In this document: positions 2 to 17,391 of the stretch, one piece after another | Layout of the letters: every line of letters starts with the position of its first letter | Position numbering within the stretch: position 1 is the stretch's first letter | Sequence record: MN871447.1 | Strand: one strand, 5' to 3' | Length of the DNA stretch: 64,000 nt | Translations under genes and position numbers: made by a program | The notes under the pieces: model-generated | Told to the model about the DNA's origin: nothing | Database searches by the model: none | What the model saw: the letters and a program-made list of their open reading frames with translations, nothing else

Positions 2-481
2 AAGACGTTTGAGGCGTTTTCCTGATGAAGTTACAATAGTGAACATACCGTCATCAGCAGTGCTCGTATCATTGGCGTCGTAATAGAATTCCCCGCCGCC
101 TACAGTGCCATTTAAGTTATAGCTGATCAACTTTAAGATCTGTTTATCGAACCACGGATTGAAATTCTTTAAATCAGTAATCGACGGAAAACTGACTGTA
201 ATTAATTGTGCTGGTAATGCATTAACGGGGAAACTTCCGTTTTCTGTGCTCACTACTGCGGTAGTCCCTGAAGCTACCATTCCCGTTACTGAACCCATTA
301 CACCTGTAACGTTGTAAATCTCTTTAGTCACGGGGTCAACCGCAAACGAAAGGTTTGTTAAATCCACGCCCCGTTCAATTGACCCAATGGTCGATTGCGG
401 GATGTTCAATAATTGAGAAAGAACCTCTGCACTAGACTGTATAGAGGTGTTTCCGGTTGGTTGAATAAAATTAGTTTGCAT
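2..481 (-). CDS. Tailspike/RBP, N-terminal part (runs off the window start; missing from the ORF track)
   Basis: Hand translation from ATG at 481 is open to the window edge: MQTNFIQPTGNTSIQSSAEVLSQLLNIPQS...GVDL...GGGEFYYDANDTSTADDGMFTIVTSSGKRLKRL. An AAGGA RBS lies upstream. The N-terminus resembles the recalled Kuttervirus TSP3/Det7 head (MISQFNQPRGSTSI...), and the GGGEF..DDG module is shared with neighbouring spikes. Confidence 0.8.
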   Translation of the reverse strand, partial: MQTNFIQPTGNTSIQSSAEVLSQLLNIPQSTIGSIERGVDLTNLSFAVDPVTKEIYNVTGVMGSVTGMVASGTTAVVSTENGSFPVNALPAQLITVSFPSITDLKNFNPWFDKQILKLISYNLNGTVGGGEFYYDANDTSTADDGMFTIVTSSGKRLKRL

Positions 482-494
482 TTATTTTTCCTTT

Positions 495-520
495 TAAGGA
501 GGGGAACCCCCTCCTCCTTT
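495..520. terminator. Rho-independent terminator-like hairpin
   Basis: Purine/pyrimidine inverted repeat (aaggagggg...ccctcctcc) directly after the stop of the 520..3276 gene. Confidence 0.5.
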
Positions 521-3276
521 TACTCTGTCTCAAAACGGAATAGTGACAATCTGGATATGTTTACCGTACCTGTAATGTCAGAAAAAGTCGCTGCAACACG
601 AGCGAACGCTGCGCCAACAGGTGCTCTTATTTTCACCGGACTAGAAGCGATGAATCGTGTTGTACCGGCGGAGTAATTTGGTAAGGTAGTGTCGGAAAAT
701 ACACTTCCCATCGCGGTATTGTTACCAACTACTTGGCCGCCAGATAATAATACTTTTTGATCATTGTAAAAATAAACGTATGGGGTAATACGGTTATTCC
801 CCGTCGAGTTCAGTAGCTGCATTGCGGCAACAACCCCGAACATATCTCCTGCTTTACAGGCAAAATATTCTGTTCCAACTAAAGTCACGTTACTCGCAGA
901 ACTTGTACCGGTTAAAGCAAGAACTTTACCTGTAACATCTGTTCTGTCGGCAATTACCCCTGTCATACCCGCGATGTATCCAACAGAAAATTTCGCTAAC
1001 GTAGAGGAAGTACTCGTGACAGTTGTCCCAGTAGTTTCCGCACTGAAATCAAAACCGCTATTAATAATAGCGTTCGCGGACGGGACGTTATAGTAGGGAT
1101 CTTTTACATACCCACTAACCGCCACGGGTTTACCGGAAGAGTGTAAATAGAGATCTTCGGTGTATGGTTTGACTTCGTGTTTGATCTCAGAGCCATTCCA
1201 ATACACTGCAACCTGGTTTCCGTTAAAGAGTGGTCGAGATGGGCTGTTGGCCAGTCCTAAGGTAGAGTCTGATTTCTGACCAGAACGCAGACGAGGAAGG
1301 AAATCGCAATTGGTAAAGTATACCGCACAGTTAGACGGCGAGCCAACTACATCTAATACGTACCCATTCCAAGCTTCGGCATGACAGTCAGTAAACTTAA
1401 CTGCATTATAACCAGACGATCCCGTAATGACTAATATACTACCGTTAGTAAAGTCAAAACTGCAGTTCATGAACGAAACATCAAAACCAGGTGCTGCAAG
1501 GTATACGTGATGTTCGTTGGTACCGCCAAATGTACAGTTAGTAAACGACATACGTTCGCCGGAGTTACTGGACGTTGTAGACGGAACATTCAAACTAATA
1601 CCGTTTTGTTCGAAACGACATTTAGTCGCAGAGAATAGATAAGTATCGATGGAAGAGAACGTCAATGCACGATAGCATTCGGTCACAACGACATTACGGA
1701 ATGAAACGTTTCTGGCGTTGGACATACTAGCTGCTTCGTTACCGATAAATATTCCAGAAAGAGTAGTTATAGCACGGCCTTGTCCATCCAGTCGCAATAC
1801 ACCGCCATCAGCCGAAAGGTTCTCACCTTCCCAAAGATTGACATTCGTTAAGGCGTCAGTATTTTGGAACTTGATCAGGTACGACCCTGTAAAGTTAGAC
1901 GATGCAACAATGTTAACATTACCTTTCGCAACGATACTGATTGATGTCGGTGCGACAATTGTTGCAGATATCAGATAGCTCCCTGCTGAAATACTGATCG
2001 AAGGACGACTGTAAAAATTAGTCCCTATTGTTAATTTCTGGACATACGCGATCGCACGTTGTAAAGGTATCGTGATATCTGTCCCTGGTTGCGCACCCCA
2101 AAATGAAACATTAATTTCTGAATTGGGGATAACACGCTCCCAATAGAAATTCCCACCGACAATGATTGTACCATAGTCTTCTGTTACACCTCCGCCGATG
2201 TGACCAATAAATTCCCCGCCGCCAATTTTAGTACCAACTGCGTAAGATTTTACTTTAATACGTTCCCCTTCAAATCCCGGTTGACGAGACCGCAGTGAAT
2301 CCACTGATTCCACGCCGTAAACACCTTGAACGACTTGCTCTAAGCTCACACCATAACTGGTATTGACTTTTGCCGCACCTGTCGTTTGCCCCAGCGTCAA
2401 AAGAATTTCTGCCGGTGTTCCCGATACCTGTGCGGTGATGACCGACCGAGAACCACCCAGTAAGACTTCAACGATGTCGTTAGCATTCAGCGCTTTCGAA
2501 AGGTTAATCTTCAATCCGGTGCTATCAACTTCATAGTGCTTATTCAGGACTTGTTTTGAGCCGTTGATGTAAATAACAGGGACTGTTTTGAATGTCCACG
2601 GAGGGGTAAGTGACGTTTCTCCACCCACTGCTGCGCCGTCGTTATATAGCCACGTTACGTTGACGTAGTCGGTAATACCAGGTTCTACTGGCGTGATAGG
2701 CGAACCCGGGTAAGGTCTTACGTAGAAGACAACGAAAGCACCCGCCGTTAATGGCCCTTTTAATTTGACTTTGTTCGATAACCGATCAAACGTGTAGTTC
2801 AACCCCTTGAACTGATGACCACCGTTCAAGAACATCTCTGAGACATCGAAACAGTCGAAGGGCAATGCGATTTCCGTTTCACCACCGTTAGCAGAACCGT
2901 TGTTATAAAGGTAACTGACATATGACGTGTAGGAGCCGAACTTACCGTCCGCCATCATTTTTCCGGTGCCGTAGATAACCGGAGTATTGTCTTTATAGAC
3001 AGCCGTGGCAGAAGCACCGTTGACGTTAATAAACGCTGCGACGTAGAGTTGGCTATCGTCAGTATAGACGTAAAAGATTTCATCTTTGATAGTAGCCGCA
3101 ATACCTTCTGCGAGGGTTTCGTAAGCATTTTCAAAAAGAAGATTTGATCGAAGATTATTTAACGTGGTGCGGTATGTTTCATTTTCTGCTCCCGCTACTG
3201 CCACTGGCAATAGAGCAGATTCTGGAACAATACCCTTACTCGAAAGTTCGGAAATTTTTCTTGTGTTATTGGCCAT
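520..3276 (-). CDS. Tailspike/depolymerase: KISEL anchor + two XD3-like docking domains + beta-helix + C-terminal CBM-like domain
   Basis: Start moved to MANNTRKISEL (ATG 3276, GAGG RBS). Two YNxGxAxGGET...NG..Q repeats, then a GVES..LR..GGGEF module, an N/T/S/C-rich beta-helix and a jelly-roll-like C-terminus. Confidence 0.85.
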   Translation of the reverse strand: MANNTRKISELSSKGIVPESALLPVAVAGAENETYRTTLNNLRSNLLFENAYETLAEGIAATIKDEIFYVYTDDSQLYVAAFINVNGASATAVYKDNTPVIYGTGKMMADGKFGSYTSYVSYLYNNGSANGGETEIALPFDCFDVSEMFLNGGHQFKGLNYTFDRLSNKVKLKGPLTAGAFVVFYVRPYPGSPITPVEPGITDYVNVTWLYNDGAAVGGETSLTPPWTFKTVPVIYINGSKQVLNKHYEVDSTGLKINLSKALNANDIVEVLLGGSRSVITAQVSGTPAEILLTLGQTTGAAKVNTSYGVSLEQVVQGVYGVESVDSLRSRQPGFEGERIKVKSYAVGTKIGGGEFIGHIGGGVTEDYGTIIVGGNFYWERVIPNSEINVSFWGAQPGTDITIPLQRAIAYVQKLTIGTNFYSRPSISISAGSYLISATIVAPTSISIVAKGNVNIVASSNFTGSYLIKFQNTDALTNVNLWEGENLSADGGVLRLDGQGRAITTLSGIFIGNEAASMSNARNVSFRNVVVTECYRALTFSSIDTYLFSATKCRFEQNGISLNVPSTTSSNSGERMSFTNCTFGGTNEHHVYLAAPGFDVSFMNCSFDFTNGSILVITGSSGYNAVKFTDCHAEAWNGYVLDVVGSPSNCAVYFTNCDFLPRLRSGQKSDSTLGLANSPSRPLFNGNQVAVYWNGSEIKHEVKPYTEDLYLHSSGKPVAVSGYVKDPYYNVPSANAIINSGFDFSAETTGTTVTSTSSTLAKFSVGYIAGMTGVIADRTDVTGKVLALTGTSSASNVTLVGTEYFACKAGDMFGVVAAMQLLNSTGNNRITPYVYFYNDQKVLLSGGQVVGNNTAMGSVFSDTTLPNYSAGTTRFIASSPVKIRAPVGAAFARVAATFSDITGTVNISRLSLFRFETE

Positions 3277-3314
3277 TGCAAGAAACCTCATTGTCGGCAA
3301 TAGGGCTGTAAAAA

Positions 3315-3362
3315 TAGTCATAGGAAAACAAATAGAGAGGGGCCAAAAGGCCCCTCTCTAGA
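3315..3362 (-). promoter_or_regulatory. Terminator hairpin + TATG late-promoter cassette
   Basis: Minus strand: hairpin GAGAGGGGCC-TTTT-GGCCCCTCTC followed by TTTGTTTTCCTATGACTA. TATG is the phiKZ-type late promoter core. Confidence 0.65.
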
Positions 3363-3369
3363 GTTTATT

Positions 3370-5337
3370 TTATTGAAGGAATGCTTTGACAGGGCCCAAG
3401 TAAACGGAACCTGATGTTTGATAATGACGAAGACCCACGTGAACAGTCGCTGCCCCAGGCGGAACAATTACCGATCCGGAGCATTTTACAACATTAGATG
3501 CACTACCTGTCGTCCCTGAAAGATTCGTCCCAATTACGTTATGGGTAATTTCTACACCTTCAATGTCGTAAAATGTATAACCGAAATAACAACCGCCATT
3601 TGTGGAAACAATATTTTCCCAATAAAGCGTGGTAGCTAAATAAAGAGTTTGTCCTGGCGAGCAGCGTAAACGTTGGCCAAATAACGTCGTCAATGCCCCG
3701 GTCGTTGTTGTGCTAAGCACTTTCGCAGAGGCACCAATTGATTTTGAGTTATCGTAAGTTATCGTAGGTTGGAAAGCGGTACCCGTTGCTGAATATATCG
3801 TAGACCAACCTGTCAAATCTGCGGTATTATAATTATAATTTCTCAGCGGGTTCGTATAATCGCCGATATTTACCATGTCATTATTCCCGTAGATATCAAA
3901 ATAATTATCGACAACTTTGACGAGGGCACCGCTACCTGTACATTTAACAACATCAACGGCCGCCATCTTATTGTATTTTCCAGCAGGACATCCCACTAGT
4001 CGGAAAATACAAGGACCTGATAAAGTGAACCATACAGGTTTACCTGCGGTTGTTCCTTGGTTCGCATACGTGGTGGCAACGTCATTTCCGCCGTCAATAA
4101 ACGTGTTTTGGATATTGACAAACGGTTTTCTTTTTGAAGAGGTATAAAGCATCTTACCGTACGGGTTAGAGGAATTGTTCTCGAAATGACACCCTATGAA
4201 ATTAATATTTCCCGTAGAGATATCAAACACAAGATCACTATAGTCAAAAGAGTGCGAATAAAAATACGCATCAAGATACTGACCGGTACTGGGAACGTAT
4301 ACGCCCGCAGCGTTCCCGTTAGCGTTTAATCCATTATACGTTACGCCACCGAAGATTGAAATGTTTTCCCCTGCGTCGTTGACGCAATTGAAATGCCAGC
4401 CATATCGCCAGAACTTACCCACAACCGGCTGTATAAATTGCAGAAGGTACGTCGACTGCGAGCCGATATAAATGTTGTCACGAAATCCTTCCACCCACAC
4501 TTTAGCTAACACCGTGGACACTTGGGTGTTTGTACCATCGGGGAAGAACCCAATACCATCTAATGTCCCTACAGGTGTTATAGGTGGTTTCGAAACGGAA
4601 GGTCCTCCGTAAGGGCCTTGTAAACGAATTTCCAGCTCTGATCCTAAATTGTAAGTGGCGCCAGGGACACCTACGACCCGAACAGCATACCCGGTAGTCA
4701 TTAATGAACTATCTACCACAAACCTTGAACGGTCCATGATCAATTTTCCGGAAGCTGCGTAGACGGTAATTTGAGAAGTGATTCGGTAACGAGCATTCGA
4801 TTCTTTAGAACGAACAGTATAACCTAACTTCAGTAATTCTAAGGTTTTTTGTACTGCAACAGTATCATCCGTTATACCGTCTCCCTTCGCCCCATTGCTT
4901 TCAAAGGTCGTTTGGCCAGAAATGTCATTCAGGGAACCAGCACCCATGGGAATAATGCTCATACCGGTACTTTCTGTAACTGATGCTGCAGCTCTCATTT
5001 GTCTGCTCGTCGGTAACCTGACTTGTTCATTGTCATAACCCAGAATAGGGTTAGCTACTCCGTCATTATTTTGGTATTGCAGTACCCAGAGTTTCGCCGC
5101 GCTTTCATAGACGAAAAATACGTCCCCTGACGTGGTTCCGTTCAGGCCCGCATCCACAGACAGGAAAGCATTATCGAAGCCTAGCGTTTGACGGAGGTCG
5201 TTAATTTTAGTGGATTTAGTGAAAGGAACTCCCGCACTGGTTTTGGCGTTAATCGGGACAACGTCATTTTCTTTGATGACGCCTGCGTCACCGAGTTCAG
5301 AAATTTTGATTCCGATAGAATCTGAAGACTTAGGCAT
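3370..5337 (-). CDS. Tailspike/depolymerase (KISEL anchor, beta-helix, CBM-like C-terminus)
   Basis: Start moved to MPKSSDSIGIKISELG (ATG 5337, GAGG RBS). Contains the GAKGDGITDDT pectate-lyase-like motif, and its body is paralogous to 8916..10961. Confidence 0.85.
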   Translation of the reverse strand: MPKSSDSIGIKISELGDAGVIKENDVVPINAKTSAGVPFTKSTKINDLRQTLGFDNAFLSVDAGLNGTTSGDVFFVYESAAKLWVLQYQNNDGVANPILGYDNEQVRLPTSRQMRAAASVTESTGMSIIPMGAGSLNDISGQTTFESNGAKGDGITDDTVAVQKTLELLKLGYTVRSKESNARYRITSQITVYAASGKLIMDRSRFVVDSSLMTTGYAVRVVGVPGATYNLGSELEIRLQGPYGGPSVSKPPITPVGTLDGIGFFPDGTNTQVSTVLAKVWVEGFRDNIYIGSQSTYLLQFIQPVVGKFWRYGWHFNCVNDAGENISIFGGVTYNGLNANGNAAGVYVPSTGQYLDAYFYSHSFDYSDLVFDISTGNINFIGCHFENNSSNPYGKMLYTSSKRKPFVNIQNTFIDGGNDVATTYANQGTTAGKPVWFTLSGPCIFRLVGCPAGKYNKMAAVDVVKCTGSGALVKVVDNYFDIYGNNDMVNIGDYTNPLRNYNYNTADLTGWSTIYSATGTAFQPTITYDNSKSIGASAKVLSTTTTGALTTLFGQRLRCSPGQTLYLATTLYWENIVSTNGGCYFGYTFYDIEGVEITHNVIGTNLSGTTGSASNVVKCSGSVIVPPGAATVHVGLRHYQTSGSVYLGPVKAFLQ

Positions 5338-5407: not shown

Positions 5408-8400
5408 TTACCATGTACTCAAAGCCACTCGTCTCCATACATTAGGCGCAACACAAACATAGTAGTAACTAGTATCGGCTGCCCATTGACCAACAGAACC
5501 AGCTGCTGTCATCGATGCTGGAACATCAACTTTTACACCGACAGGGTTACCGTTAATTGTAATCGCACCTGTAAAATAAGCGTTACGAAAACCGGCAGTA
5601 GAAGAACCAAAATCAAACGATCCTGTTACACTGGGAAGAATCGTGTTATAAGCAGTGACGATCCCAGTAGCTGCCACTTTAAAAATATCAGTTAAAGTAT
5701 CAGATACCGATAATGTAGTTTTGTTCGAAGCCGAAACACTAAATGAATTCCCAGAACCAATTGCTAATTTAGAAGGGGAACCGTTCTTTTTCAAGAAACC
5801 CAAATCGCCATTGTTACTGAAAGAAAACATCGAATTATCGGCTGTCATCGATAAAGACCCGCCAATCGAAAGACTTTCGAATGGGTAAAACGTGTAACTT
5901 GGGAGTAGTCTTTGATCGATAACAAGGTTATCATTAACGTTCCCTACAATACCATCGATCGCGTAGGTAGTGCTATACGTACCGTCGTTATTGAGTAAAC
6001 GTCTAACTAGTCGTTGTTGACCTGTTACGGAAGTGGAAGAGCCCGAAGAAATATAAAGTGGGATACCCATAACGACAAGTTTAACAGATGCATCAGGTAC
6101 TTTGATCAGTGTCTGATTGTTATCAACATCGATAGATGTAATTTGTACGGTAAACGTTGTCTTCAAAACAGAATCTAACGTTATACCGCTCTTAATGATT
6201 TTATCATACGCGCTATAGTTAGAGTCAATAGTTGGAGAAAACTTAAAATCATTACCGTGTTTATCTACGCGAATGAAAGGACGGACGATATCACCAGGTT
6301 TAAAAATACCACCACCTGTTCCGTTGTTTACCCCCGAGTAAGTATTTGAGGACATTATCGAGAACATATCGGCTTGCGGGGTATAGTCACAACCGCCAGG
6401 GAAAACACTTACGCCACCGGTATAAGCCTCTACCGCCTTCAAGATGATTGGCGTAGCCGGATCAATCTGGAAATAAACGGAAACCTGCGGTGTCCAAGTA
6501 CCAACTCCATCGGTACCGTATGGGCGTTTGTTAAAAACGGTAATTAGTTTATAACCGTTTTTAAAATCGACTACCGTTTCGCCATAGGCTACGAAATCAT
6601 TGTTATTCGTAACGGTTGTTTCAATATTACCCGTTAGACCAATAGAGATTTTTTTCGGATCGAAGTTACCGGTAAGATCCTTAAGCCAGATATGAACTAC
6701 ACTATCTTTCGCTAAGTTTTTGAACGGTAGATAACAGACACCGCTGTTCAAAGAAAGTCCGTAAGGGTTGAGAAATTCTTTTGATTGCTTGATGTCTCGT
6801 AAGGTGTCAAAATCTAATTCCCCGAGAACACCTCCGACGTTATACGTCCCGTATTTGAAGTCGTAACCACCATGGAGAAAAGCCCCTTCGTCACGGACAG
6901 GCGTACCGATCTGAATACCTCTTACACCAACCGCAGTGGGTACTTGGGTATAGTCATTTGGCCAAACCCATTTTTGGGTAACGCTGTCGTAATAGCCGAA
7001 TGATCCATCTTCAAATGACAACATGTAATAGTTTTTGCTATCATTTTTATACTGTGAAACAGCACCAATGTGAAGGTAGCAGCTTCGGCTCCATACACCG
7101 TCGTTATATCCAAATTTAGAAATAACGAAATTACGATAAGTCCACTCTGTATAAAGGCCAGTAAAGCTATGTCCCTTTGCAGTGGTATAGACAATCCCTT
7201 TCGAAGGGTTACAGTCTACGCCTAACCCGCCGTTATTGGATATATAAGCGCCACTCGCATCAAATCCGGTCCCAGTTACCACCATTGTGTAAGAAGGGAT
7301 AGTACCGGATTTATTTGAGCTTGGGTTTTGCCAATGGATGTTACTTGTACAAATCCCGCCCTTCCAATATGACCAATCGACGCTACTTCTTAATACGCCA
7401 CGCCAACCAGAATGGAAACGACAGTTTTCATAGTTAGCCCCGTAGAAATTACCGAAACGAGAAGTCCCCATGAAATCAAGAATGTAACGATAGTCTTTGA
7501 CGTTGTCATCAAAGTCAGTGCCGTCATTGAAAAGGCTCTGCGTCGTTGTACCTGCCATCGCTACCGCACACCAGGTGAACATCGAAATGGCTACGCCGTC
7601 ATGGAAAACATATTCTGGGTTAATGATTAAAATACCAACTCCCGAAGAACATTGATCCGGAGTTTTACTGACATTCAAATCACCGCGTATATCGCCGCCC
7701 AAGAAAGTGACATTTTGGCAACTCACGCTACCCCAATAATTCGCCCCATTAATAGCATCGAATTTTTCTTTTACTTCATCGTAACCATGTTGGAAGCCAT
7801 TAAGCTTTTTACCAGTGACGGGATAACTATTAGACGGGGTAGGAACAACATAGATTGTTGACCCTCGCATGTCATAAGTCACACCGTTCCTTACTTTTAC
7901 CGCGTTTTTACAAATACGATAAAGATTTGGAGAAAACGTTATTCGTAATCTTTTATATCCAGTATAAGTGGCGGCGGTATTGGAGGTGTAAACTTCTATT
8001 GGGATTTGCTTGAAAATCCCGTTAATGGCATCGCCGAGACATACAACGTTTTCTTTTGTTGACCACACTTCGTCGTAGGTAGTAGCCATCGCGCCATTCG
8101 CTAAAGGGTCAATTTCTCCTTTAGAGATATCAATGAGATATTCTACCCCGAGTTTGTTATAGATCTTCCCCTCGGTAATAACGTGTTTTCCTGCCAATGA
8201 AAGATTGACAACGCCTGTCTTGTTCCAATCACCAGCACCGCCATCTTTTTCTTTATAAAATCCACGAGTGCTAATTTTATTAGGCGAAACAGTCATGTTG
8301 AATATATCTACTGTCGCCGAGAGCCAATGGCCCAAACCGTCAGCTATTGTCTCACCTGTACCCATCGCTATCAGCGAGGTCCCTTGCGCGGGATTGATTA

Positions 8401-8915: not shown

Positions 8916-10961
8916 ATGACCGATATCACTGCATTGAAAATTTCTGAACTATCGCCCAGCTCTAATCCGTCAGAGAATGCGTTTCTTCCGCTCTCAGAAG
9001 CGAATGGAAACGAATCCGAAAAAGTTAGTATTGGTACCCTCAGAGAAACGTTAGGTTTTGAGAACGCGTACAGCACGATTGCTGCCGGGCTCAGTGTAAC
9101 TACAGAGGGGAATGTTTTCTTTGTTTACGAAAACAGTACACGAGACTATGTCTTGGGGTATGTAAACCAAGGGAACGGGACTTACTCTGCATTAATGTCA
9201 GACAGTACGACACAAGTTCGCTACGCGACGAAAGCGCATATTGTCAACTCTTTATTCATGTTACAAGGAGTAGAGAGTTTCGACGCATTACGGACGCTTA
9301 AACCATGGTACCAAGGACAGCGTGTCACGCTGAAGAGTTACTACAAAGACGGGGTTACGGGTGGGGGTATTTTCGTTGCGCGTTTAGGGGTAAATGCGGA
9401 TGACAACGGCACGATTGCTGCCGGGAATGAATTCTACTGGCAACGGATTATTACAGATCAGTTGTCTTTTGAGGACTTTGGTGCAGTCGGGGACGGCGTA
9501 CTGGACGATACTAGTAATATTCAAAAAGCGGTCAACTACTGTGCCAAAAATGGCATTGCACTAACGTGTTTAGGGAAAGTATACGCGGTCAGTACCGTAA
9601 ATTTCCCGACCGATTTAGTGATCGATATGCGTAATGCAGTACTTTTGTCGCTGCCCTCTGTTACGACGGGTTATACCTTAACAATCAGCGGCTATTTGTC
9701 ACCTGCGGCTAATCCAGGGAAATTTGATAATATTCGCGTTCAGCGTACCTTAATTAATACTCATCAACCCGACACTAACAGTGTCGTAGACGGCGTGTCA
9801 TTTGGTGTCGATGCGCACAATATTTCCTTCTACAATCTTAAGGTCTCTGGGTTTAGGGACGGAGTTTGTTTTAACGGGAAGAGTGCTTACCTCATTCGTT
9901 TATACAGTCCGATCATCGGACAATGTTGGCGCCGAGGGATGGCCTTTTATGCGAATACTGATTCCAATGAGAACGTGACTATTTACGGCGGCGTGATTGC
10001 AGATTGTTGTAATTTTACTTTCGACGGTACCGGGCTCTACTTATCAGGGAGTGCCTCGAGTATCGATGTCAGGTTCTTTGGAACCAGTTTTGATTATTGC
10101 GACATCTCAGTTGATATTTATCAATCTAACGTCGAGCTCCACGGTTGTCACTTGGAAAACAATAACAACAACCCTCATATTCGACTTTCGTACACCTCAA
10201 CCAAAAACCAACCCTATTTGATCATGAAAGGGGGGACAATGGGAGGCGGACCGAACGCGAACTCATGGAGCGGTATTCCGGTAGAAAATAGTACGGGTCG
10301 CCCTTACCTCGTCTTCATTACCAACACTGGCGGTGCCCACGTCGATATTGATGGAACTGACACCAGTAAATACATGACGGGAGTCAGGAGAACTACCGAG
10401 ATCGTAGGTGTAGAGGGGGATAACTACCAGTTGATCGGGACCTTAAGGGTGAGGAACAAAATGACCTCTGGAAACATGGATAACGCCAGTCGTCCCATGC
10501 GACCTTGTAGTGCCCTTAACGTTATTCTGATCAACCAGTATCAAACTGCCGCATGGACACCGAGTTACACTAACGCCGACCTCACTTATACGATTGATAC
10601 TACGAATTATTCTAACCCTAATTCACCGCACTCACGAAAAATTACACAAGGAAGCGTACGTAACGTCTCTTACTGGCAGGACGTGACACTGCGCGGCGGA
10701 GATATTTTCCACGCGGAGGCCGAAATCAAAATTACCTCGTTGACGGCTGGTTACGTCGCACTTCGAGTGGATTTTTACGACTCTGCCGGGAACGTAATAC
10801 AATCGTCAATCAAATCTGTATCTGCGGTGACAACCGATTGGAATAACGTGTGGGTCTGGTTACGTGCGCCAAACGGTACAGTCAAGGCAAAAGTTCAAGA
10901 GTACTTAAACGGTTTTGTTGGAACGGCATATTTCACCAATGAACACGTTTGGATTTCTTAA
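8916..10961 (+). CDS. Tailspike/depolymerase (KISEL anchor, GGG-F/DDNG module, beta-helix, CBM-like C-terminus)
   Basis: Start moved to MTDITALKISEL (ATG 8916, GGAG RBS). Contains FGAVGDGVLDDT, a beta-helix and a C-terminal YWQDVTL...FYDSAG...LRAPNGTVKAKV module. Confidence 0.85.
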   Translation: MTDITALKISELSPSSNPSENAFLPLSEANGNESEKVSIGTLRETLGFENAYSTIAAGLSVTTEGNVFFVYENSTRDYVLGYVNQGNGTYSALMSDSTTQVRYATKAHIVNSLFMLQGVESFDALRTLKPWYQGQRVTLKSYYKDGVTGGGIFVARLGVNADDNGTIAAGNEFYWQRIITDQLSFEDFGAVGDGVLDDTSNIQKAVNYCAKNGIALTCLGKVYAVSTVNFPTDLVIDMRNAVLLSLPSVTTGYTLTISGYLSPAANPGKFDNIRVQRTLINTHQPDTNSVVDGVSFGVDAHNISFYNLKVSGFRDGVCFNGKSAYLIRLYSPIIGQCWRRGMAFYANTDSNENVTIYGGVIADCCNFTFDGTGLYLSGSASSIDVRFFGTSFDYCDISVDIYQSNVELHGCHLENNNNNPHIRLSYTSTKNQPYLIMKGGTMGGGPNANSWSGIPVENSTGRPYLVFITNTGGAHVDIDGTDTSKYMTGVRRTTEIVGVEGDNYQLIGTLRVRNKMTSGNMDNASRPMRPCSALNVILINQYQTAAWTPSYTNADLTYTIDTTNYSNPNSPHSRKITQGSVRNVSYWQDVTLRGGDIFHAEAEIKITSLTAGYVALRVDFYDSAGNVIQSSIKSVSAVTTDWNNVWVWLRAPNGTVKAKVQEYLNGFVGTAYFTNEHVWIS

Positions 10962-10974: not shown

Positions 10975-11196
10975 ATGTTTCAAGTAGGCGACACCGTTCG
11001 CATCCTTTCTTGTCAAACTCGAGAAGACTTAGTTGGGAAAGAAACGACCATCAGTGCACTGGACGCTAAATTGAAAGATTTGGCTTGGGCAGATATCTAC
11101 GGAATGGATCAATATATTTCGGTGGTCATCGATACCGATGCACGGTTTATTGCGGCTCAATTGGAACTCGTAGCCAGTGACATTGAAGGCTCTTAA
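10975..11196 (+). CDS. Small hypothetical protein, possibly an SH3/KOW-like barrel
   Basis: MFQVGDTVRIL... (73 aa) with an AAGGA RBS right after the tailspike stop. Confidence 0.6.
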   Translation: MFQVGDTVRILSCQTREDLVGKETTISALDAKLKDLAWADIYGMDQYISVVIDTDARFIAAQLELVASDIEGS

Positions 11197-11271: not shown

Positions 11272-13647
11272 ATGTCTAATGAAATACAGAAAATTAGCGA
11301 GTTGAACCCTGCTACTACGCTGACTGAAAACACTCTACTCCCTGTGGTCTCTGAACAGACGGAGACCAATAACACAGATATCTCAACACTGCGTTCAGTC
11401 TTGTTGTTCGACAAAGCCTTCAACTCAATCGCAGAAGGTGCAGATGGAACGGAGAAGGGAGAGTCTTACTTTGTTTACACGGATGTAACCAAAACCGCGG
11501 TACAGGGTTACGTCAACCAAGGTGGGGGTTCTTACACGCCGCTCGTAGATATTAATGGCGTCGCTGTTCGGTACATCTCCGGGCAGACGTTACGAGGGTT
11601 AGATTATTTTACTAACGGTGTAGATTCCTTCGCTAAGTTACGGACACTATCGCCTCTGTACGCAGGACAACGCGTAAAGTTGAAAAGTTGGGTAGCGGGT
11701 GGAAAAACAGGCGGCGGGGAATTTATCGCCGGAATCGGATCAGCAACGGATGACGGCGGGACAATCGCCGCGGGAAACGGATTCTACTGGGAAAGGGTAC
11801 TCTCTGAGCCCGTAATTTATCCAGAGTTTTTTGGTGCAGTCCCGGGAGGTACGGACTCACTTTCTGCCATCCAACAAGCACTAAAAGTTGCGGCCGGAAA
11901 ATACCCCGTCTCGTTTTGTAAAAGTACCTATTCCATTTCTGGACCTATTTATATCCCTAGTAATTCTGTCCTTAATGGAAACGGGGCAACATTAAAAACA
12001 TTAACTCCTATTGATACTACTTGGATGCAAGGCGCTATTTTCGCACCGGGCAATTATCACCCGGAATATGTGAGTAATGTCCCTAAGAACAATCTTACCT
12101 CCACCTACGGGAGTAACGTGGTTGGCATTGACCCCTCTCTCGTCAGTAAATACAAAACAGGCGATTTAGTGAGGATCTCATCCGTGCGAGGGATTCTTAA
12201 CGGTGGTTTTCTTATCCCGTTTTACATGAAGCTTTGTAAAGTAATAGGTGTATCCGGTAGCAATATCACGTTGGATATTCCTGTCGATTATACTGGTTCT
12301 GATCTGACCATTATGCAAGCAAATCAGCCCGCTTACAATGCTCGTTTTAATCAGCCACTATTTGTTTGTGAAAACGCCATCGTTCAAGACTTTGTTGTAG
12401 ACACTTGGGACCATTGGACTGGCGACAGCGCAACTTTTAATTGCGTTTTCCGTAACATCTCAGGTAAAGCCCGCGCGGTGGTTTATGGGAATACTTTTTG
12501 TCGTACGCGTTTTGATAATATCAATATCACTTTTCGCGGAAGAATCAGTGAACTGGCATTTGGTTCTCACGATACTCGCATTACCAACCTCACTGCGATT
12601 GCCGATACGACCCTTAATGCTAACGCCATGATAACATGGGCAGAAAGCGGCGATAACTGTCATATTGATGGTTTTACACTGGTATTCAATAATACCGCGG
12701 CGCCGTCGGTAATTTGCCGTTTCTCCTCCTTCACTAATAGTTCCATTCGAAACGGCATGATCTTCGGGGTGACAAACAGTAATAACATTTTATCCTTCGA
12801 GAGTTATGGTGGTGATCGTGTTCCTTGTAGCAATAACCTGTTTGAAAATATCACGATAAATTACGTCACGAAAACAGCGGTAATTTGTGATACGTACCAT
12901 TCTGCTGCGGATTCATTGGTAACGAACTGCCAGTTCAAAAACATCAATTATATTGGTATTAAACCAGACGTAGCAATTTTAAGGACGATGACTTCGGCAG
13001 GAATCAGTAACCCTATTAAAGGACTTAAGGCAACCATCTCGTCAGTAAATGGCGGGGCTTTCGTAGCGAACGATTCTATTGAGGGGTTAATTGATTTAAC
13101 GGGCCCTATTACCATTTCATCTTTAGCGGCGATTGCAACAAAAAATCGAGTGAAACTGATTAACAGTTCCCGATTCACTTTCCACGGAAACGACAACGTG
13201 ATTGAAAACAGTGTATCAATCACAGACTCGACTCCAGGATCGGTCTATAAGGTCATTAACTACCCCGTAGGGTCTATTCGTCTCAATGATGAAATCACTT
13301 TCAAACTAGAGGGTTCCACCGCGGGTAACTTAGGGGCGAAAACAATTGGAATTGGTTTTTTGGATAACACGTCGCCTACACGGGTACTAGTCGGTCCTTC
13401 TTTGACGCAGGCCGCTGGCGGGTCGATTTTCAACATAGAAGGTAGCATTAGCATTATCGGTGGCTTTGCTGTTATTACTGCGGTACTTAACGATAATGGG
13501 ACAATCAAACCTTTTCGCGCCATCGGGAACATTGACCCTATCACGTCCGCCGATTTTACTTTGAACGTTATTCTTCGTAACAACGCTGCGGGAGACACCA
13601 TCAATCTTCAGCGATTAACTATACGAAATATTGATTTAACTTGGTAG
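11272..13647 (+). CDS. Tailspike/depolymerase (KISEL anchor, beta-helix)
   Basis: MSNEIQKISEL anchor, GVDSFAKLRTL...GGGEF...DDGGTI module, FGAVPGGTDS motif and a beta-helix. Confidence 0.85.
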   Translation: MSNEIQKISELNPATTLTENTLLPVVSEQTETNNTDISTLRSVLLFDKAFNSIAEGADGTEKGESYFVYTDVTKTAVQGYVNQGGGSYTPLVDINGVAVRYISGQTLRGLDYFTNGVDSFAKLRTLSPLYAGQRVKLKSWVAGGKTGGGEFIAGIGSATDDGGTIAAGNGFYWERVLSEPVIYPEFFGAVPGGTDSLSAIQQALKVAAGKYPVSFCKSTYSISGPIYIPSNSVLNGNGATLKTLTPIDTTWMQGAIFAPGNYHPEYVSNVPKNNLTSTYGSNVVGIDPSLVSKYKTGDLVRISSVRGILNGGFLIPFYMKLCKVIGVSGSNITLDIPVDYTGSDLTIMQANQPAYNARFNQPLFVCENAIVQDFVVDTWDHWTGDSATFNCVFRNISGKARAVVYGNTFCRTRFDNINITFRGRISELAFGSHDTRITNLTAIADTTLNANAMITWAESGDNCHIDGFTLVFNNTAAPSVICRFSSFTNSSIRNGMIFGVTNSNNILSFESYGGDRVPCSNNLFENITINYVTKTAVICDTYHSAADSLVTNCQFKNINYIGIKPDVAILRTMTSAGISNPIKGLKATISSVNGGAFVANDSIEGLIDLTGPITISSLAAIATKNRVKLINSSRFTFHGNDNVIENSVSITDSTPGSVYKVINYPVGSIRLNDEITFKLEGSTAGNLGAKTIGIGFLDNTSPTRVLVGPSLTQAAGGSIFNIEGSISIIGGFAVITAVLNDNGTIKPFRAIGNIDPITSADFTLNVILRNNAAGDTINLQRLTIRNIDLTW

Positions 13648-13723: not shown

Positions 13724-15718
13724 ATGTCTAATGATACTCAAAAAATTTCGGAATTAGGGAGTGCGGCTAGCGTCCCTGAGAACTCAATGGTCCCTATAGT
13801 GACGGTTCCTACCGAAACAAACCAGATCACTCTTTCTTCGTTGCGCTCGGTATTAAATTTCGAAAGTGCCTTTGACACTATCGAATTAGGATTAGCTGGG
13901 ACAGAAAAGAACGAACCCTTCTTCGTTTACACCGACGATACTCGGTCATTTGTTAACGGGTATCTCAATCAAGGGGGTGGGACCTATACATCGCTTCTCG
14001 ATAAGGACGGTAAGCAGATCAATAACGTTGTTTACAGTAAAATTATTGGGAGTGTTTATCGTGGGTTTGTTAGCGGGCTCTGTCAGAACGCGGGGTTCGG
14101 AAGCGATAATATAGTCGTTTTAAAGAAAGGGTTAGTGCTCTCGGGGATCATGGTAGTCATCGACACTACATCGCTCCGTTTTTATTTCAGCAACAATTCT
14201 GCTCTCACTGTTGACCATTGGGCACAGAGCGGCGACAACCTTGTGGTGACGGATTCCTCAGGGAATAACGTTACACTAGCAGACGGTTGGTCGCAACTAT
14301 TAACGGGCGGTACTCTCCCAGTTGACGTAAGAAGCGAGACTATTGATTTCTGGGAAAGAATTAAAACCAACGGACAATTTGATCTGACAGCTAGACCAAA
14401 CGACCCAAAAGGGATTGCAGGTATTGTTTTTGGCGGTAAGAATAACAAAGGCGCGTTGGTTATTGATCAGAGAGGTCGTCTCCAGACCTATGCGATTAAA
14501 AATGGTGTCATGACGGCGGCCAGAATGGCTATCCCTGTAACGGAGCCTTACGGTTATGGTGCCGGGTCGCGGTTAGGAAGCATCACTCGCTTTCCGGTCA
14601 GCGGCGCGGAAGACGATACTCTCTCTTCGTCTATTATTTTTCTACCCCAAGCAGATGGTTCAGTGAAAGCCTATTTAGCAGGTCCCGGGCTGTATACAAA
14701 CTTTGCTGCGCCTTTTCCCGATGCCGTAAAACGCGTAGCTAAAGAGATTGTTACAGCCGACCTTTTACCAAGTGCTTTATTGAATTCTTCTACTAACCCA
14801 ACCGATTGGCTCAGCACGGAGTCTTGGGTTAAATTGGTGACGGTCAATGACAATATTCAAGGCTCGGTATTCAGCGGTATTTATTCTGGGGGTGCGGGTT
14901 TATCGGAAGCTGTATGCGCTTACTTGATTGAATTCCAATCGAAACCCTCGAATGTGACTACCGTCAACGCAAACACACTGCGTTACTACCTTAGAATTAC
15001 GTCACTTCGTTCTCGAGGAGATCTGCGTTACAGTTCAGGAACGGTACGTTTTGGAGTGGTGCGAGATGCGACGGCCAACACTTCAACGCTTTATGCGCGC
15101 TTAGCGGTTCGTTCTGAGAACTCTTCCCTTATTCCCTTACGTGCTGACCCGCCTGGTTCCGATGGCGTCGCGAAAGTAACCATCAATACTGTATTAAACA
15201 GCTATGTTACGACTGAGCCCTCCGGGATCGTGTACCTCCCCGTTACGGAGTCGCTGACTACCAACGTCGCTGTTCAGCTCAACAATGGGACGTATGCTCA
15301 GACACGCGGAGCAGTGATTCGATTAACGAATAATCTTTCAGCCAACACTCGCGGGTCATTCGTCACCTCGGGAGAGTTCTCCGCTAACGATACTTTATCT
15401 GCTATCAACCGTGGCTACGCTGGACTAGGAACAGTGACAGCTGCTCGAGTATCGACAGGGAAATATACGATCACAGGGGCCTCCACAGGGACTTCTTCGG
15501 TGGCCTGGAAAATCACACCTCCATTTGGGTCCTTTGGCTCGGGTATTCAAAACCTGGTAGCGGTAATCGAATCGGACGTTTCCAATGTCATTACTATCGG
15601 CGTGAGAAAAATTCTTTACACCGCTGATACTACCACCGGTGCGGTCACGACAGCGTTGGGAGATTATGTAGATATCCCGAATGATACCTGGATCGATATC
15701 CACACTACGCTCAGTTGA
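13724..15718 (+). CDS. Tail fibre protein (KISEL anchor, non-beta-helix body, fibre C-terminal domain)
   Basis: MSNDTQKISEL anchor. The C-terminus RVSTGKYTITG...W.ITPP...DIPNDTWIDIH is typical of a phage tail-fibre tip domain. Confidence 0.75.
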   Translation: MSNDTQKISELGSAASVPENSMVPIVTVPTETNQITLSSLRSVLNFESAFDTIELGLAGTEKNEPFFVYTDDTRSFVNGYLNQGGGTYTSLLDKDGKQINNVVYSKIIGSVYRGFVSGLCQNAGFGSDNIVVLKKGLVLSGIMVVIDTTSLRFYFSNNSALTVDHWAQSGDNLVVTDSSGNNVTLADGWSQLLTGGTLPVDVRSETIDFWERIKTNGQFDLTARPNDPKGIAGIVFGGKNNKGALVIDQRGRLQTYAIKNGVMTAARMAIPVTEPYGYGAGSRLGSITRFPVSGAEDDTLSSSIIFLPQADGSVKAYLAGPGLYTNFAAPFPDAVKRVAKEIVTADLLPSALLNSSTNPTDWLSTESWVKLVTVNDNIQGSVFSGIYSGGAGLSEAVCAYLIEFQSKPSNVTTVNANTLRYYLRITSLRSRGDLRYSSGTVRFGVVRDATANTSTLYARLAVRSENSSLIPLRADPPGSDGVAKVTINTVLNSYVTTEPSGIVYLPVTESLTTNVAVQLNNGTYAQTRGAVIRLTNNLSANTRGSFVTSGEFSANDTLSAINRGYAGLGTVTAARVSTGKYTITGASTGTSSVAWKITPPFGSFGSGIQNLVAVIESDVSNVITIGVRKILYTADTTTGAVTTALGDYVDIPNDTWIDIHTTLS

Positions 15719-15729
15719 TTGAGGTAAAA

Positions 15730-17391
15730 ATGAACTACTATTACATTGATTCGTCCGCTACAGTTAATGGGACCGGGACGAAAAGCAATCCCTTTAATTC
15801 GATTCAGTCAGCGATTGACGCCAACCTAGTCCACCCGCTAACGCTATACCTTAAAGCAGGGCAAACTTACGAACTGGCATATTACAACCGTACCGCAACC
15901 AGTTTCTTTAATAATAAGACTGGTATACAGTCTGTTATTACTAGATACGGTGCGGGCGCCAAACCAATACTCACCAGTAATAACGATACGATTATCATTG
16001 ATGCGTACGCGTGCCAAATAAAGTTTGAAGACATTCGTATTTCCCCGAAACCTGGATCAGAAAGAACCGCCATTTACCTTAACCTGATTCCAATCGGCGA
16101 TAGTGCCAATAACAATATTTGTAACTTAACCTTAAACAAAGTTGACTTTATTGGTACACCTGAGTCGTTAGGGGGGATGAACGGAATCAATCGGGTGTTC
16201 TGTTTGAACAGTTTGGTCGATTATGCCGGGCTTAATAACATTGCCCATAAACTCTTAATCAGTAACTGTACGTTCGACAACGTGAATGCCGGTGTACAAT
16301 TGAGAGGTAACCCAGATCTCTCGGACAAAACGACTTATCACGGTGACCAGAAGAAAAGTTATGGTTTTAGGGTGATCAACTGTTCGTTTACGAACATCAT
16401 TAACTCGGCGGTGTTCATTGGTTGGGCAGCGAGTAAAAATCAATCGCGGAATGTCATTGGCGACGACATGGCGACGGGTGTGGACGGACTGTACTATTCC
16501 AGTTACCGTTACAACGTGTACAATACCGCAACAGGTGCGTCTCAAGCCGATGTCCCGGTTTGGTTCTCTGGAACACGTTATCTGACATTACAGAATTTCG
16601 AAATCCACGGCGCCGGCCCGGCTTACCCTGACCGTCAAACTATTGACTTCGATTATCATTGTCACTATTGCGTGGCGCGTTATGGATATACTTCAAACAA
16701 CGCCCGCGGTTCAATGATTATCCAAGGACCTTTCAGTAACAGCTGGTACAGTTCTAAAGGGTACACGCCATTGTCCAATGATGCGTATACTTTGTACTAT
16801 ACGCTTGGTTTTGGGTCGATCGGTAACGTCATCGAATATGTGATTTCATTTAACGATGGAGTAGCGAGAACCACCAATACAGCAGATAAATTTTGGCAAA
16901 AAACCTCTGCGTTTCGCTACGTCTATGATAATGTTGTACGGAACTGTGTGTTCATTGATACGGTCACTACAAGTAACGATAATGCGATAGCTATAAACCC
17001 GCAGGCCGATGACAATGCAACGGCACTCAGTTTGACGCTTGATAGCAACATTTTTTATTACACCAATAAAACAGCTACGGAACTTGTGGTAGGTAGTACG
17101 GTGTCCGGTTTCCCAGGGTTATTAGGTAAATTTAAACTCAAAAATAATGTCTTCTATTCTGAAAAATGGAATGGTGTACAACCCACTTCCACAGGATTTC
17201 TGGAAGAAAGTAATCTATTCAGCAACCCAGCGTTCATCAATGGTTTGTCTAATAGCGCTTTCAGCGGATTAAAAGAAGCTTTACTCAATATTAAAGTCAA
17301 AATGAATAGTCCTTGTATCGGTAACGGTACAACGGGAGTTTCGCCGGATTTTGATGGTAAAATTGGTAATAATATCGGAATCGTCCAGTAA
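15730..17391 (+). CDS. Anchor-less right-handed beta-helix protein (putative polysaccharide lyase/depolymerase)
   Basis: ATG 15730 after a GAGGT RBS. YYIDSSA..NGTGTKSNPFNSIQ.AI...LYLKAGQTY is a pectin-lyase-fold start, and NxFxNP.F lies near the C-terminus. Confidence 0.75.
   Translation: MNYYYIDSSATVNGTGTKSNPFNSIQSAIDANLVHPLTLYLKAGQTYELAYYNRTATSFFNNKTGIQSVITRYGAGAKPILTSNNDTIIIDAYACQIKFEDIRISPKPGSERTAIYLNLIPIGDSANNNICNLTLNKVDFIGTPESLGGMNGINRVFCLNSLVDYAGLNNIAHKLLISNCTFDNVNAGVQLRGNPDLSDKTTYHGDQKKSYGFRVINCSFTNIINSAVFIGWAASKNQSRNVIGDDMATGVDGLYYSSYRYNVYNTATGASQADVPVWFSGTRYLTLQNFEIHGAGPAYPDRQTIDFDYHCHYCVARYGYTSNNARGSMIIQGPFSNSWYSSKGYTPLSNDAYTLYYTLGFGSIGNVIEYVISFNDGVARTTNTADKFWQKTSAFRYVYDNVVRNCVFIDTVTTSNDNAIAINPQADDNATALSLTLDSNIFYYTNKTATELVVGSTVSGFPGLLGKFKLKNNVFYSEKWNGVQPTSTGFLEESNLFSNPAFINGLSNSAFSGLKEALLNIKVKMNSPCIGNGTTGVSPDFDGKIGNNIGIVQ

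What the first reader, a model, noticed from the sequence alone, without database searches (positions are those of the whole stretch)
2..17391. Bank of at least eight receptor-binding proteins built on a private KISEL anchor module
Six genes (starts at 3276, 5337, 8755, 8916, 11272 and 13724) begin with a homologous ~100-aa module: K(I/L)SEL...P...LR..L.F..A..T...G...T.....F.VY.....V..Y.N. Their bodies diverge: five beta-helix depolymerases and one non-enzymatic fibre. Two more RBPs lack the module. Multi-depolymerase arsenals are established for phiK64-1/RaK2 and the Ackermannviridae. I do not recall one of this size with a dedicated anchor family in a phiKZ/SPN3US-like phage. It implies a multi-capsule host-range device on a chimallivirus baseplate.
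Basis: partly seen in the sequence, partly recalled or inferred. Interest (0 to 1): 0.78.

Follow-up and report, generated by a model that had tools for sequence, protein, structure and literature searches.

The report
Shared anchor module on phage receptor-binding proteins
A Klebsiella jumbo phage carries a row of capsule-degrading tail proteins that all start with the same ~108-residue module, most likely their attachment piece; the many-fibre arsenal is already published for its close relative phiKp24, but the shared module itself has not been described in the papers I could read.

Summary
Six genes in window 520-15718 begin with a homologous ~108-aa module (24-49% identity between paralogues; pairwise BLASTP E 1e-10 to 1e-28). 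Two module-less RBP genes flank them.

The window is 100% identical to GenBank MN871447.1 (KpLz_1_41, 305 kb, host K. pneumoniae). This is a close relative of phiKp24 (Maaswegvirus, Chimalliviridae). The 14-fibre hyperbranched arsenal of phiKp24 was published in 2022, and 11 of its enzymes were confirmed in 2026. The "arsenal in a chimallivirus" claim is therefore correct but not new.

What those papers do not describe is the module as a paralogous family:
- It has no Pfam, NCBIfam or PDB relative, by sequence or predicted fold, and is not gp10-like.
- It sits at residue 1 in 132 of 135 relatives found among 1.84 billion proteins.
- Among phage records it occurs only in 23 Maaswegvirus-/Moabitevirus-like ones, at 4-10 tblastn places each.
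- The seven modules of the main bank map one-to-one onto phiKp24 modules (54-95% identity), while most bodies behind them are swapped.

Best reading: a lineage-specific virion-attachment domain that defines fixed slots for exchangeable depolymerase cassettes. The docking partner and virion presence are not shown. Interest is moderate.

The parts
2..481 (-). 5' part (first 160 aa) of u7, a 721-aa module-less RBP that runs off the window start. It has its own N-terminus followed by a D1-like 'Phage_tail_beta' region, and is related to phiKp24 gp304.
520..3276 (-). gA, 918 aa. Module (res 1-~110, nt 2947-3276), then two T4-gp10-like XD branching domains (res ~111-290, nt 2407-2946), then a D1-like PF27114 domain (res ~323-410), then a beta-helix body. 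The N-terminal 409 aa are orthologous to phiKp24 gp306, the published 'primary' fibre; the body is swapped.
3370..5337 (-). gB, 655 aa. Module (nt 4996-5337) plus a pectate-lyase-like body that is paralogous to gD. The module is orthologous to phiKp24 gp307 (88%); the body is swapped.
5408..8755 (-). gC, 1115 aa. Module (nt 8420-8755) plus a long 'tail fiber' body (phrog_15695) with a fibre-like C-terminus. Only the module (54%) and the last 78 aa match phiKp24 gp308, and the gene is inverted relative to it.
8916..10961 (+). gD, 681 aa. Module (nt 8916-9251, closest to phiKp24 gp309 at 65%), a D1-like PF27114 domain, then the body of phiKp24 gp310 (94% nt identity).
10975..11196 (+). 73-aa ORF that travels with the gp310-type body in both phages. 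Possibly a body-specific assembly factor (inference).
11272..13647 (+). gE, 791 aa. Module (nt 11272-11601, 95% to phiKp24 gp310), a D1-like PF27114 domain, then a new body whose residues 182-772 match solved chain 8bke at E 2e-125.
13724..15718 (+). gF, 664 aa. Module (nt 13724-14053) plus a non-beta-helix body with a Phage_tail_C_2 end. Whole-length orthologue of phiKp24 gp312 (95%), which was not counted among the 14 depolymerases.
15730..17391 (+). gG, 553 aa, module-less (phrog_16942). Orthologue of phiKp24 gp313 (90%), which its authors predicted to be a beta-helix hydrolase with a short N-terminal peptide.
17440..18006 (-). 188-aa DUF7941 / phrog_2935 'virion structural protein'. It flanks the array here, in Serratia phage Moabite and on a 264-kb metagenomic contig. 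The same domain forms the N-terminus of two further RBPs upstream of the window.

Best explanation
The ~108-aa module is a lineage-specific N-terminal virion-attachment (anchor/docking) domain of trimeric receptor-binding proteins in Maaswegvirus- and Moabitevirus-type chimalliviruses.

Each paralogue marks one fixed 'slot' in the hyperbranched fibre complex at the baseplate. The part behind it is an exchangeable cassette: an optional gp10-like XD domain or D1-like head, then a depolymerase or fibre body. That cassette sets which capsule type the slot recognises.

Recombination between related phages keeps the anchor and replaces the body. The breakpoints lie from just after the module (residue ~113) to the start of the beta-helix (residue ~409).

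Shown:
- the homology and its strict N-terminal position;
- the clade restriction;
- one-to-one anchor orthology combined with body swapping;
- the same body on different anchors;
- no relation to the gp10-like fold.

Inferred:
- that the module binds a virion component;
- that the paralogues bind different sites;
- that the proteins are trimeric and present in the particle.

The partner is unknown. Arrays of 6-8 module-bearing genes occur in relatives where no gp10-like XD domain was detected. I therefore favour docking onto a conserved baseplate or fibre scaffold over docking onto XD domains.
For: Position:
- 132 of 135 relatives carry the module within the first 12 residues, mostly of 500-1350-aa proteins (about 20 are shorter proteins or fragments).
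- K7-I8-S9-E10-L11, R41, A49, T60, F66 (Y in gE), V68 and V77 (gE numbering) are each held by 77-95% of 132 cluster representatives.

Slots:
- The seven bank modules of KpLz_1_41 pair one-to-one with phiKp24 gp301, gp306, gp307, gp308, gp309, gp310 and gp312 at 54-95% identity. Identity to any paralogue is 24-49%.
- Gene order is conserved apart from the inverted gC.

Cassettes:
- Homology to the phiKp24 orthologue ends at residues 113-409 in six of the seven.
- The gp310 body sits behind a gp309-type module in gD, while the gp310 module carries a new body in gE.
- gA-type and gF-type bodies also occur without the module in the same genome.
- The gF-type body occurs elsewhere behind other N-termini, including PF18668.

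RBP nature:
- Tail/depolymerase PHROGs and solved depolymerase relatives.
- phiKp24 homologues are active depolymerases, and its fibres were seen by cryo-ET.

Clade restriction:
- 23 of 50,697 phage records, all Maaswegvirus- or Moabitevirus-like, with 4-10 tblastn places each.
- 134 clusters among 1.84 billion representatives.
- Arrays of 6-8 consecutive members in Moabite and on a 264-kb contig, always beside the same DUF7941 virion gene.

Not a known domain:
- No Pfam or NCBIfam hit, and PF27114 is the downstream domain.
- No PDB sequence hit.
- An AlphaFold2 model (pLDDT 81) has no PDB fold match (best E 0.9), and in BFVD it matches only family members.
- hhalign against the XD domains gives probability 0.1%.
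Against: - No direct evidence that any of these proteins is in the virion. The phiKp24 papers contain no mass spectrometry and no resolved fibre-baseplate junction.
- No binding partner was identified, and complexes could not be modelled with the tools at hand.
- The module is also on gA/gp306 and u5/gp301. These carry gp10-like branching domains and were proposed to be the primary and secondary fibres, so a simple 'plug for peripheral fibres' picture does not hold.
- One member lies in a P2-like Serratia prophage, outside its tail genes. This is odd for an anchor tuned to a jumbo-phage baseplate.
- No one-to-one slot orthology is seen between the Klebsiella and Serratia phage modules, so fixed slots are shown only within the Maaswegvirus-like group.
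- The monomer model may misrepresent an intertwined trimer.
- The XD search used a narrow HMM built from 5 sequences.
Confidence: 0.7

Rival explanations
1. The module is a branch node (socket) or an N-terminal trimerisation cap, not a plug. It would form a head onto which other fibres dock, or by which module-bearing fibres bind each other, so that the network is built by module-module contacts.
For: - It is present on both the XD-bearing 'organiser' proteins and the simple ones.
- There are 6-9 copies per genome but only three XD units in the Klebsiella phages, and none was detected in the Moabite or L010 arrays.
- The predicted fold has two parts whose relative orientation differs between models of family members (high rmsd at TM ~0.5).
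Against: - In characterised branched systems (CBA120, RaK2), as summarised in PMC10253068, the extreme N-terminus is the attaching end.
- There is no evidence for self-association.
- The strong one-to-one conservation of each paralogue fits distinct partners better than a generic cap.
Confidence: 0.15
2. The module is an assembly or recognition tag. It would be bound by a shared chaperone or assembly factor, or used for targeting, and would be absent from, or irrelevant in, the mature particle.
For: - The conserved extreme N-terminal peptide (K-I/L-S-E-L) has lower model confidence (pLDDT 64-71), as expected of a segment that folds on a partner.
- Small conserved ORFs lie between the RBP genes.
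Against: - The 73-aa ORF travels with the body, not with the module.
- Known RBP chaperones act on C-terminal parts (established knowledge).
- About 108 well-folded residues is large for a tag.
Confidence: 0.07
3. The proteins are soluble, non-virion depolymerases released at lysis, and the module serves oligomerisation or stability.
For: - No proteomic proof of virion association was found in the literature read.
- One member is encoded outside the tail genes of a P2-like prophage.
Against: - The array lies among virion-structure genes in three lineages.
- gA and u5 carry gp10-like branching domains that are known only from virion fibre complexes.
- phiKp24 shows a very large fibre mass by cryo-ET and infects many capsule types.
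Confidence: 0.04

Closest known systems
Hyperbranched tail-fibre system of Klebsiella phage phiKp24 / vB_KpM_FBKp24 (Ouyang et al. 2022, PMC9700779; DepoCatalog 2026, PMC13385381)
   Same: - Same lineage and same locus.
- gF, gG, u1, u2 and u6 are whole-length orthologues (72-96% aa).
- All seven bank modules have one-to-one orthologues.
- gA corresponds to the 'primary' fibre gp306, with its gp10-like domains.
   Different: - The bodies of u5, gA, gB, gC (central part), gD and gE are different cassettes.
- KpLz_1_41 has an extra gp313-like gene (u3).
- gC is inverted.
- The papers rank the N-termini by length and do not report that gp301, gp306-gp310 and gp312 share a homologous first ~110 aa.
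Ackermannviridae CBA120 TSP1-4 branched complex
   Same: - A branched multi-tailspike complex assembled through N-terminal domains.
- gA res 99-187 match the 341-aa 'Tailspike protein' chains 7rfo/7rej (E 3e-11).
- phiKp24 gp306 gave HHpred 99.9% to CBA120 gp165.
- D1-like head domains precede the beta-helices.
   Different: - The module resembles none of AD, XD or D1: hhalign probability 0.1% against XD, and no Foldseek PDB match.
- In CBA120 only TSP4 carries the baseplate anchor. Here the same module heads 7-9 proteins.
Alcyoneusvirus RaK2 / phiK64-1 long tail fibres (PMC10253068)
   Same: - A jumbo Klebsiella phage with 9-11 RBPs.
- A lineage-specific ~105-aa N-terminal anchor with no homologues outside the group.
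- gp10-like XD domains used for branching.
   Different: - In RaK2 the anchor is on one organiser protein (gp528), and the others use CBA120-D1-like heads.
- tblastn with the KISEL module finds no Alcyoneusvirus record.
- RaK2 is not a chimallivirus (own knowledge).
Przondovirus (KP32/K11) RBP1 anchor-branching domain with RBP2 docking peptide (PMC13352976)
   Same: A conserved N-terminal element of an RBP mediates docking, the bodies are exchangeable, and a short conserved N-terminal peptide is the contact (abstract).
   Different: This is a two-RBP podovirus system with no sequence relation detected. Here the conserved peptide is part of a ~108-aa folded module that is repeated many times per genome.
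PHROG family phrog_27731 (unknown function)
   Same: All six window proteins, the upstream member, the Moabite and L010 members and the prophage member match profile positions ~1-110.
   Different: The PHROG is a 688-position whole-protein family with no annotation. It does not delimit the module and gives no function.

Membership tests
KISEL N-terminal module family (phrog_27731 N-terminus) | Homologous ~108-aa domain at the extreme N-terminus of a long tail-protein-like ORF | tested here: met
   HMM E <= 1e-42 for all six window ORFs. phrog_27731 positions 1-110 are matched by all six. 132 of 135 relatives have it within the first 12 residues.
T4 gp10-like (XD) branching domain | Sequence or profile similarity of the module to XD domains | tested here: not met
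   hhalign of the module alignment A2 against the XD alignment A4 gives probability 0.1%. Foldseek against PDB finds no tailspike or gp10 match.
T4 gp10-like (XD) branching domain | Presence of XD domains elsewhere in the bank proteins | tested here: met
   gA res 99-279 match 9d80_D (E 6e-28), 9d83_D, and 7rfo/7rej. There are two units in gA and one in the upstream u5, and none elsewhere in the genome. The phiKp24 authors' HHpred results agree.
Tailspike head domain (PF27114 Phage_tail_beta / TSP1-gp66-like D1) | The module is this domain | tested here: not met
   PF27114 is recorded for gA, gD and gE but not for gB, gC or gF, although all six have the module. The PDB matches to 6tgf, 7vyv and 6w4q lie at res ~115-205 (gD, gE) or 320-410 (gA), downstream of the module.
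Beta-helix capsule depolymerase (tailspike) | Right-handed parallel beta-helix body related to a characterised depolymerase | tested here: inconclusive
   Met for gE (8bke, E 2e-125). Likely for gA, gD and gB. No evidence for gC. Not seen in gF, whose model is poor. Enzyme activity was not tested.
Chimalliviridae (phage of origin) | phiKZ-type multisubunit virion RNA polymerase and gp181-like tail protein | tested here: met
   Window 26163-32297 encodes two RNAP beta-type subunits (phrog_3148, phrog_2986). Window 32342-38935 encodes a 2197-aa protein with a transglycosylase region (phrog_3201; Moabite's annotators liken its homologue to phiKZ gp181). A Peptidase_S80 head protease lies nearby.
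Chimalliviridae (phage of origin) | Chimallin (nucleus shell) and PhuZ tubulin genes | not tested
   Not in the window. Both are reported for the close relative phiKp24 (gp083, gp094; bioRxiv 10.1101/2021.03.02.433402). NCBI taxonomy places Maaswegvirus and Moabitevirus in Chimalliviridae.
Virion-associated RBP | Protein detected in purified particles | not testable with these tools
   The phiKp24 structural paper contains no proteomics, and none was found for KpLz_1_41.

The most novel reading that the evidence does not exclude
The module is one half of an undescribed, XD-independent plug-and-socket system. Seven or more diverged plugs would each recognise their own site on a conserved chimallivirus scaffold, possibly involving the DUF7941 proteins that bracket the array. 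This would give an ordered, addressable assembly of a 14-RBP fibre tree. As a corollary, the copy in a P2-like Serratia prophage would be a cargo protein that exploits the same plug, for instance as a decoy that interferes with a super-infecting jumbo phage.
Probability: 0.15. Interest if true: 0.6.

Novelty: new member of a known kind. Interest (0 to 1): 0.35.

Why it matters
Multi-depolymerase jumbo phages are studied for how one particle recognises many Klebsiella capsule types. How a dozen or more different fibres are placed in one complex is unresolved for phiKp24.

Seven of its fibres, including the proposed primary one, share one anchor family with slot-specific paralogues. Evolution keeps the anchors and swaps the bodies. 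Together these give a concrete, testable parts list for interpreting cryo-EM maps and virion proteomes of this lineage, and a clean marker (an HMM) for finding such arrays in metagenomes.

This does not change the general picture of RBP modularity.

Tried and rejected
- **Known-domain hypotheses for the module.** All were negative: Pfam and NCBIfam scans, a PDB profile search, Foldseek against PDB, and hhalign against gp10-like XD domains. I first suspected that the precomputed PF27114 was the module. One search showed it is the downstream D1-like domain.
- **XD domains as the socket.** There are only three XD units in the genome, and none was detected in the Moabite or L010 arrays. I dropped this as the general partner, with the caveat that the XD HMM is narrow.
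- **Ancient seven-slot architecture shared with Serratia phages.** No one-to-one orthology was found.
- **gF as a relative of the K25 depolymerase gp300.** Rejected. The paralogue u4 shares only its N-terminus with gp300.
- **gF structure.** The AlphaFold2 model was poor (pLDDT 56) and its fold search was uninformative.
- **Repeat-domain proteins at window 60668-63898 as an XD scaffold.** No PDB or Pfam support.
- I did not resend those rows. I built a new alignment from window sequences and whole proteins returned by the searches only.
- **Literature searches that found nothing.** These covered chimallin with FBKp24 and PDB entry 9D80.

Full report
**What is there**

Window 1-17500 holds eight large ORFs: four on the minus strand, then four on the plus strand. 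I name the six module-bearing genes as follows:

| Name | Coordinates | Length |
|---|---|---|
| gA | 520-3276(-) | 918 aa |
| gB | 3370-5337(-) | 655 aa |
| gC | 5408-8755(-) | 1115 aa |
| gD | 8916-10961(+) | 681 aa |
| gE | 11272-13647(+) | 791 aa |
| gF | 13724-15718(+) | 664 aa |

Their first ~108 residues align end to end with 16 invariant columns. Identity over the first 112 aa is 28-49% among the six, and pairwise BLASTP E-values are 1e-10 to 1e-28.

An HMM of the six modules hits nothing else among all six-frame ORFs of the window, and hits each of the six at its N-terminus with E <= 1e-42. Two RBP-like genes without the module flank them. These are the 5' end of a 721-aa gene at 2-481(-), and gG at 15730-17391(+).

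**Where the window comes from**

The region is 100% identical to GenBank MN871447.1. That record is an unannotated, 'UNVERIFIED' 305-kb entry named 'Serratia phage KpLz_1_41' whose stated host is Klebsiella pneumoniae. Its annotated relatives are phiKp24 (vB_KpM_FBKp24, genus Maaswegvirus), Centimanus, MJ359, LPKP23 and KpLz-2_45.

The rest of the window carries phiKZ-type split RNA polymerase subunits, a 2197-aa gp181-like tail protein with a transglycosylase region, and an S80 head protease. Maaswegvirus and its sister genus Moabitevirus are placed in Chimalliviridae. phiKp24 was reported to encode tubulin and nucleus-shell proteins.

**What is already published**

phiKp24 was described in 2022 as carrying fourteen putative depolymerase tail fibres in a hyperbranched arrangement, imaged by cryo-ET (PMC9700779). 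In 2026, eleven of the fourteen were reported as active enzymes covering 14 capsule types (PMC13385381). Related ~299-kb Klebsiella jumbo phages with 17-19 possible RBPs have also been reported (PMC10265529).

The claim that such an arsenal is unrecorded in a phiKZ-like phage therefore does not hold.

Those papers do not describe the shared module. [quoted passage not shown] Its HHpred table reports only T4-gp10/CBA120-like hits in gp301 and gp306. The 2026 paper removed the N-termini before analysis.

**Size of the bank**

I fetched the whole public record in separate pieces and scanned them. The bank continues upstream of the window to fourteen RBP-like genes. The genome has nine module-bearing ORFs:
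- seven in the bank: the six above plus an 892-aa gene upstream, u5;
- one 745-aa tail protein elsewhere;
- one 207-aa module-only ORF elsewhere.

Other N-terminal classes exist alongside:
- u1 and u2 start with a DUF7941 domain, as does the free-standing 188-aa protein at 17440-18006.
- u3 and gG are paralogues.
- u4 and u7 share a different N-terminus.

**What the module is not**

- It has no Pfam or NCBIfam hit. The precomputed PF27114 'Phage_tail_beta' seen on relatives is the D1-like domain downstream, present in gA, gD and gE only.
- A profile search of PDB sequences gives nothing better than E 0.03.
- An AlphaFold2 model built on 25 sequences has mean pLDDT 81 and pTM 0.67. It shows a less confident N-terminal peptide, a beta-hairpin, two short helices, a four-stranded sheet and a C-terminal helix.
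- Foldseek finds no solved structure like it (best E 0.9). In the viral predicted-structure library it finds only members of the same family.
- Profile-profile comparison with the gp10-like XD domains of gA, u5 and gp306 gives probability 0.1%.

The only library entry that covers the module is the first ~110 positions of phrog_27731, which has unknown function.

**Distribution**

- tblastn with a Klebsiella-phage module and with a Serratia-phage module finds the same 23 of 50,697 phage records. All are Maaswegvirus-like (host Klebsiella) or Moabitevirus-like (hosts Serratia and Pectobacterium), with 4-10 places each.
- A profile search of 1.84 billion representative proteins finds 134 clusters. 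In 132 of 135 the module starts within the first 12 residues, mostly of 500-1350-aa proteins (about 20 are shorter proteins or fragments).
- Sampled members lie on contigs of up to ~300 kb.
- Moabite has eight consecutive module-bearing genes. A 264-kb metagenomic contig has six. Both arrays sit next to the same 188-aa DUF7941 gene as in the window.
- Conserved columns cluster in the N-terminal K-I/L-S-E-L peptide and in the core.
- One exception was found. A 1006-aa protein with a clear module (E 3e-26) sits between the portal gene and ogr in a P2-like prophage of Serratia fonticola, away from its tail genes.

**Slots and cassettes**

Comparing KpLz_1_41 with phiKp24 is the most informative result. 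Each of the seven bank modules has one clear orthologue:

| KpLz_1_41 | phiKp24 | Module identity |
|---|---|---|
| u5 | gp301 | 83% |
| gA | gp306 | 94% |
| gB | gp307 | 88% |
| gC | gp308 | 54% |
| gD | gp309 | 65% |
| gE | gp310 | 95% |
| gF | gp312 | 93% |

Identity to any other paralogue is 24-49%. Behind the modules, homology stops at residue 113 (gC), 192 (gB), 233-249 (u5, gD, gE) or 409 (gA), and different bodies follow.

gD carries the gp310 body (94% nt identity) behind a gp309-type module. gE carries the gp310 module and head (93% nt) in front of a new body that matches solved chain 8bke at E 2e-125. From memory, and not checked here, 8bke is the KP34 gp57 capsule depolymerase. The 73-aa ORF after the gp310 body moved with it.

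gF, gG, u1, u2 and u6 are conserved over their whole length. Bodies of the gA and gF types also occur in the same genome without the module. The gF body occurs in other phages and prophages behind other N-termini. No one-to-one orthology is visible with the Moabite modules.

**How it most likely works**

An N-terminal, clade-specific, strongly conserved domain in front of freely exchanged receptor-binding bodies is the signature of a virion-attachment domain. This follows from established knowledge of tailspike modularity and from the CBA120 and RaK2 work summarised in PMC10253068.

I conclude, with confidence about 0.7, that the module anchors each protein in its own slot of the fibre complex and that the bodies are capsule-specificity cassettes.

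The module also heads gA/gp306 and u5/gp301, the proteins with gp10-like branching domains. The published layering by N-terminal length therefore cannot be the whole story.

Arrays of module-bearing genes exist where I detect no XD domain. I therefore think the modules dock on a conserved baseplate or fibre scaffold, not on XD domains. The XD domains may instead hold module-less fibres. All of this is inference. Virion presence, oligomeric state and the partner are not shown.

**Verdict**

The sequence observation is correct and statistically solid. The interpretation as an RBP bank on a chimallivirus is correct but already published for the sister phage. The 'anchor family' is a real, apparently undescribed domain family of a known kind, with a clear slot-and-cassette pattern. 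Interest is moderate.

Noticed in passing
L011 10001-13021 (protein P0126/P0153; Serratia fonticola contig): A 1006-aa protein with a clear copy of the module (E 3e-26) lies in a P2-like prophage between the portal gene and ogr, outside the tail genes. Its body has no Pfam, PHROG, PADLOC or PDB hit. It could be acquired cargo or a decoy against jumbo phages; this is unexplained.
   Followed up: partly
window 17440-18006 (-); L002 11894-16040; L007 7858-8724: A 188-aa DUF7941 / phrog_2935 'virion structural protein' flanks the RBP array in the window, in Moabite and on a 264-kb contig. The same domain forms the N-terminus of two upstream RBPs (phiKp24 gp294/gp295 type), and a fourth copy lies elsewhere in the genome. 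This is a second N-terminal family and a candidate partner or scaffold.
   Followed up: partly
window 10975-11196 (+): A 73-aa ORF follows the gp310-type body in both phages, although that body sits behind different modules. It appears to belong to the body cassette and may be an assembly factor.
   Followed up: partly
window 5408-8755 (-): gC is inverted relative to its phiKp24 counterpart gp308. It keeps only the module and the last 78 aa, so the whole central part was replaced.
   Followed up: yes
L005 30266-30889 (-) (record MN871447.1 30266-30889): A 207-aa ORF consists of the module plus ~95 residues with no family hit, far from the bank. Similar short members exist in Serratia phage 2050HW (132 and 345 aa).
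   Followed up: no
window 60668-62023 (-) and 62036-63898 (-): Two adjacent proteins (451 and 620 aa) are built of repeated ~50-aa units that hit many 'tail'/'virion structural' PHROGs (2163, 13857). One weakly matches solved chain 9d93 'Tail collar fibers, gp4'. Neither has a Pfam hit.
   Followed up: partly
window 26163-41125: This stretch holds a phiKZ-type virion RNA polymerase beta-type subunit pair (1495 and 543 aa), a 2197-aa gp181-like tail protein with a transglycosylase region, and a 714-aa conserved protein. The synteny with Moabite is mirrored.
   Followed up: partly
whole window (GenBank MN871447.1): The public record is titled 'Serratia phage' and flagged UNVERIFIED with no annotation, yet its stated host is Klebsiella pneumoniae and it is a Maaswegvirus-like phage. 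The organism name is misleading.
   Followed up: yes
protein P0104 (950 aa, metagenomic): A tail-fibre-like protein has four weak internal matches to the second half of the module (i-E 1e-4 to 1e-6) and none at the N-terminus. This may be a distant repeat relative or noise.
   Followed up: no
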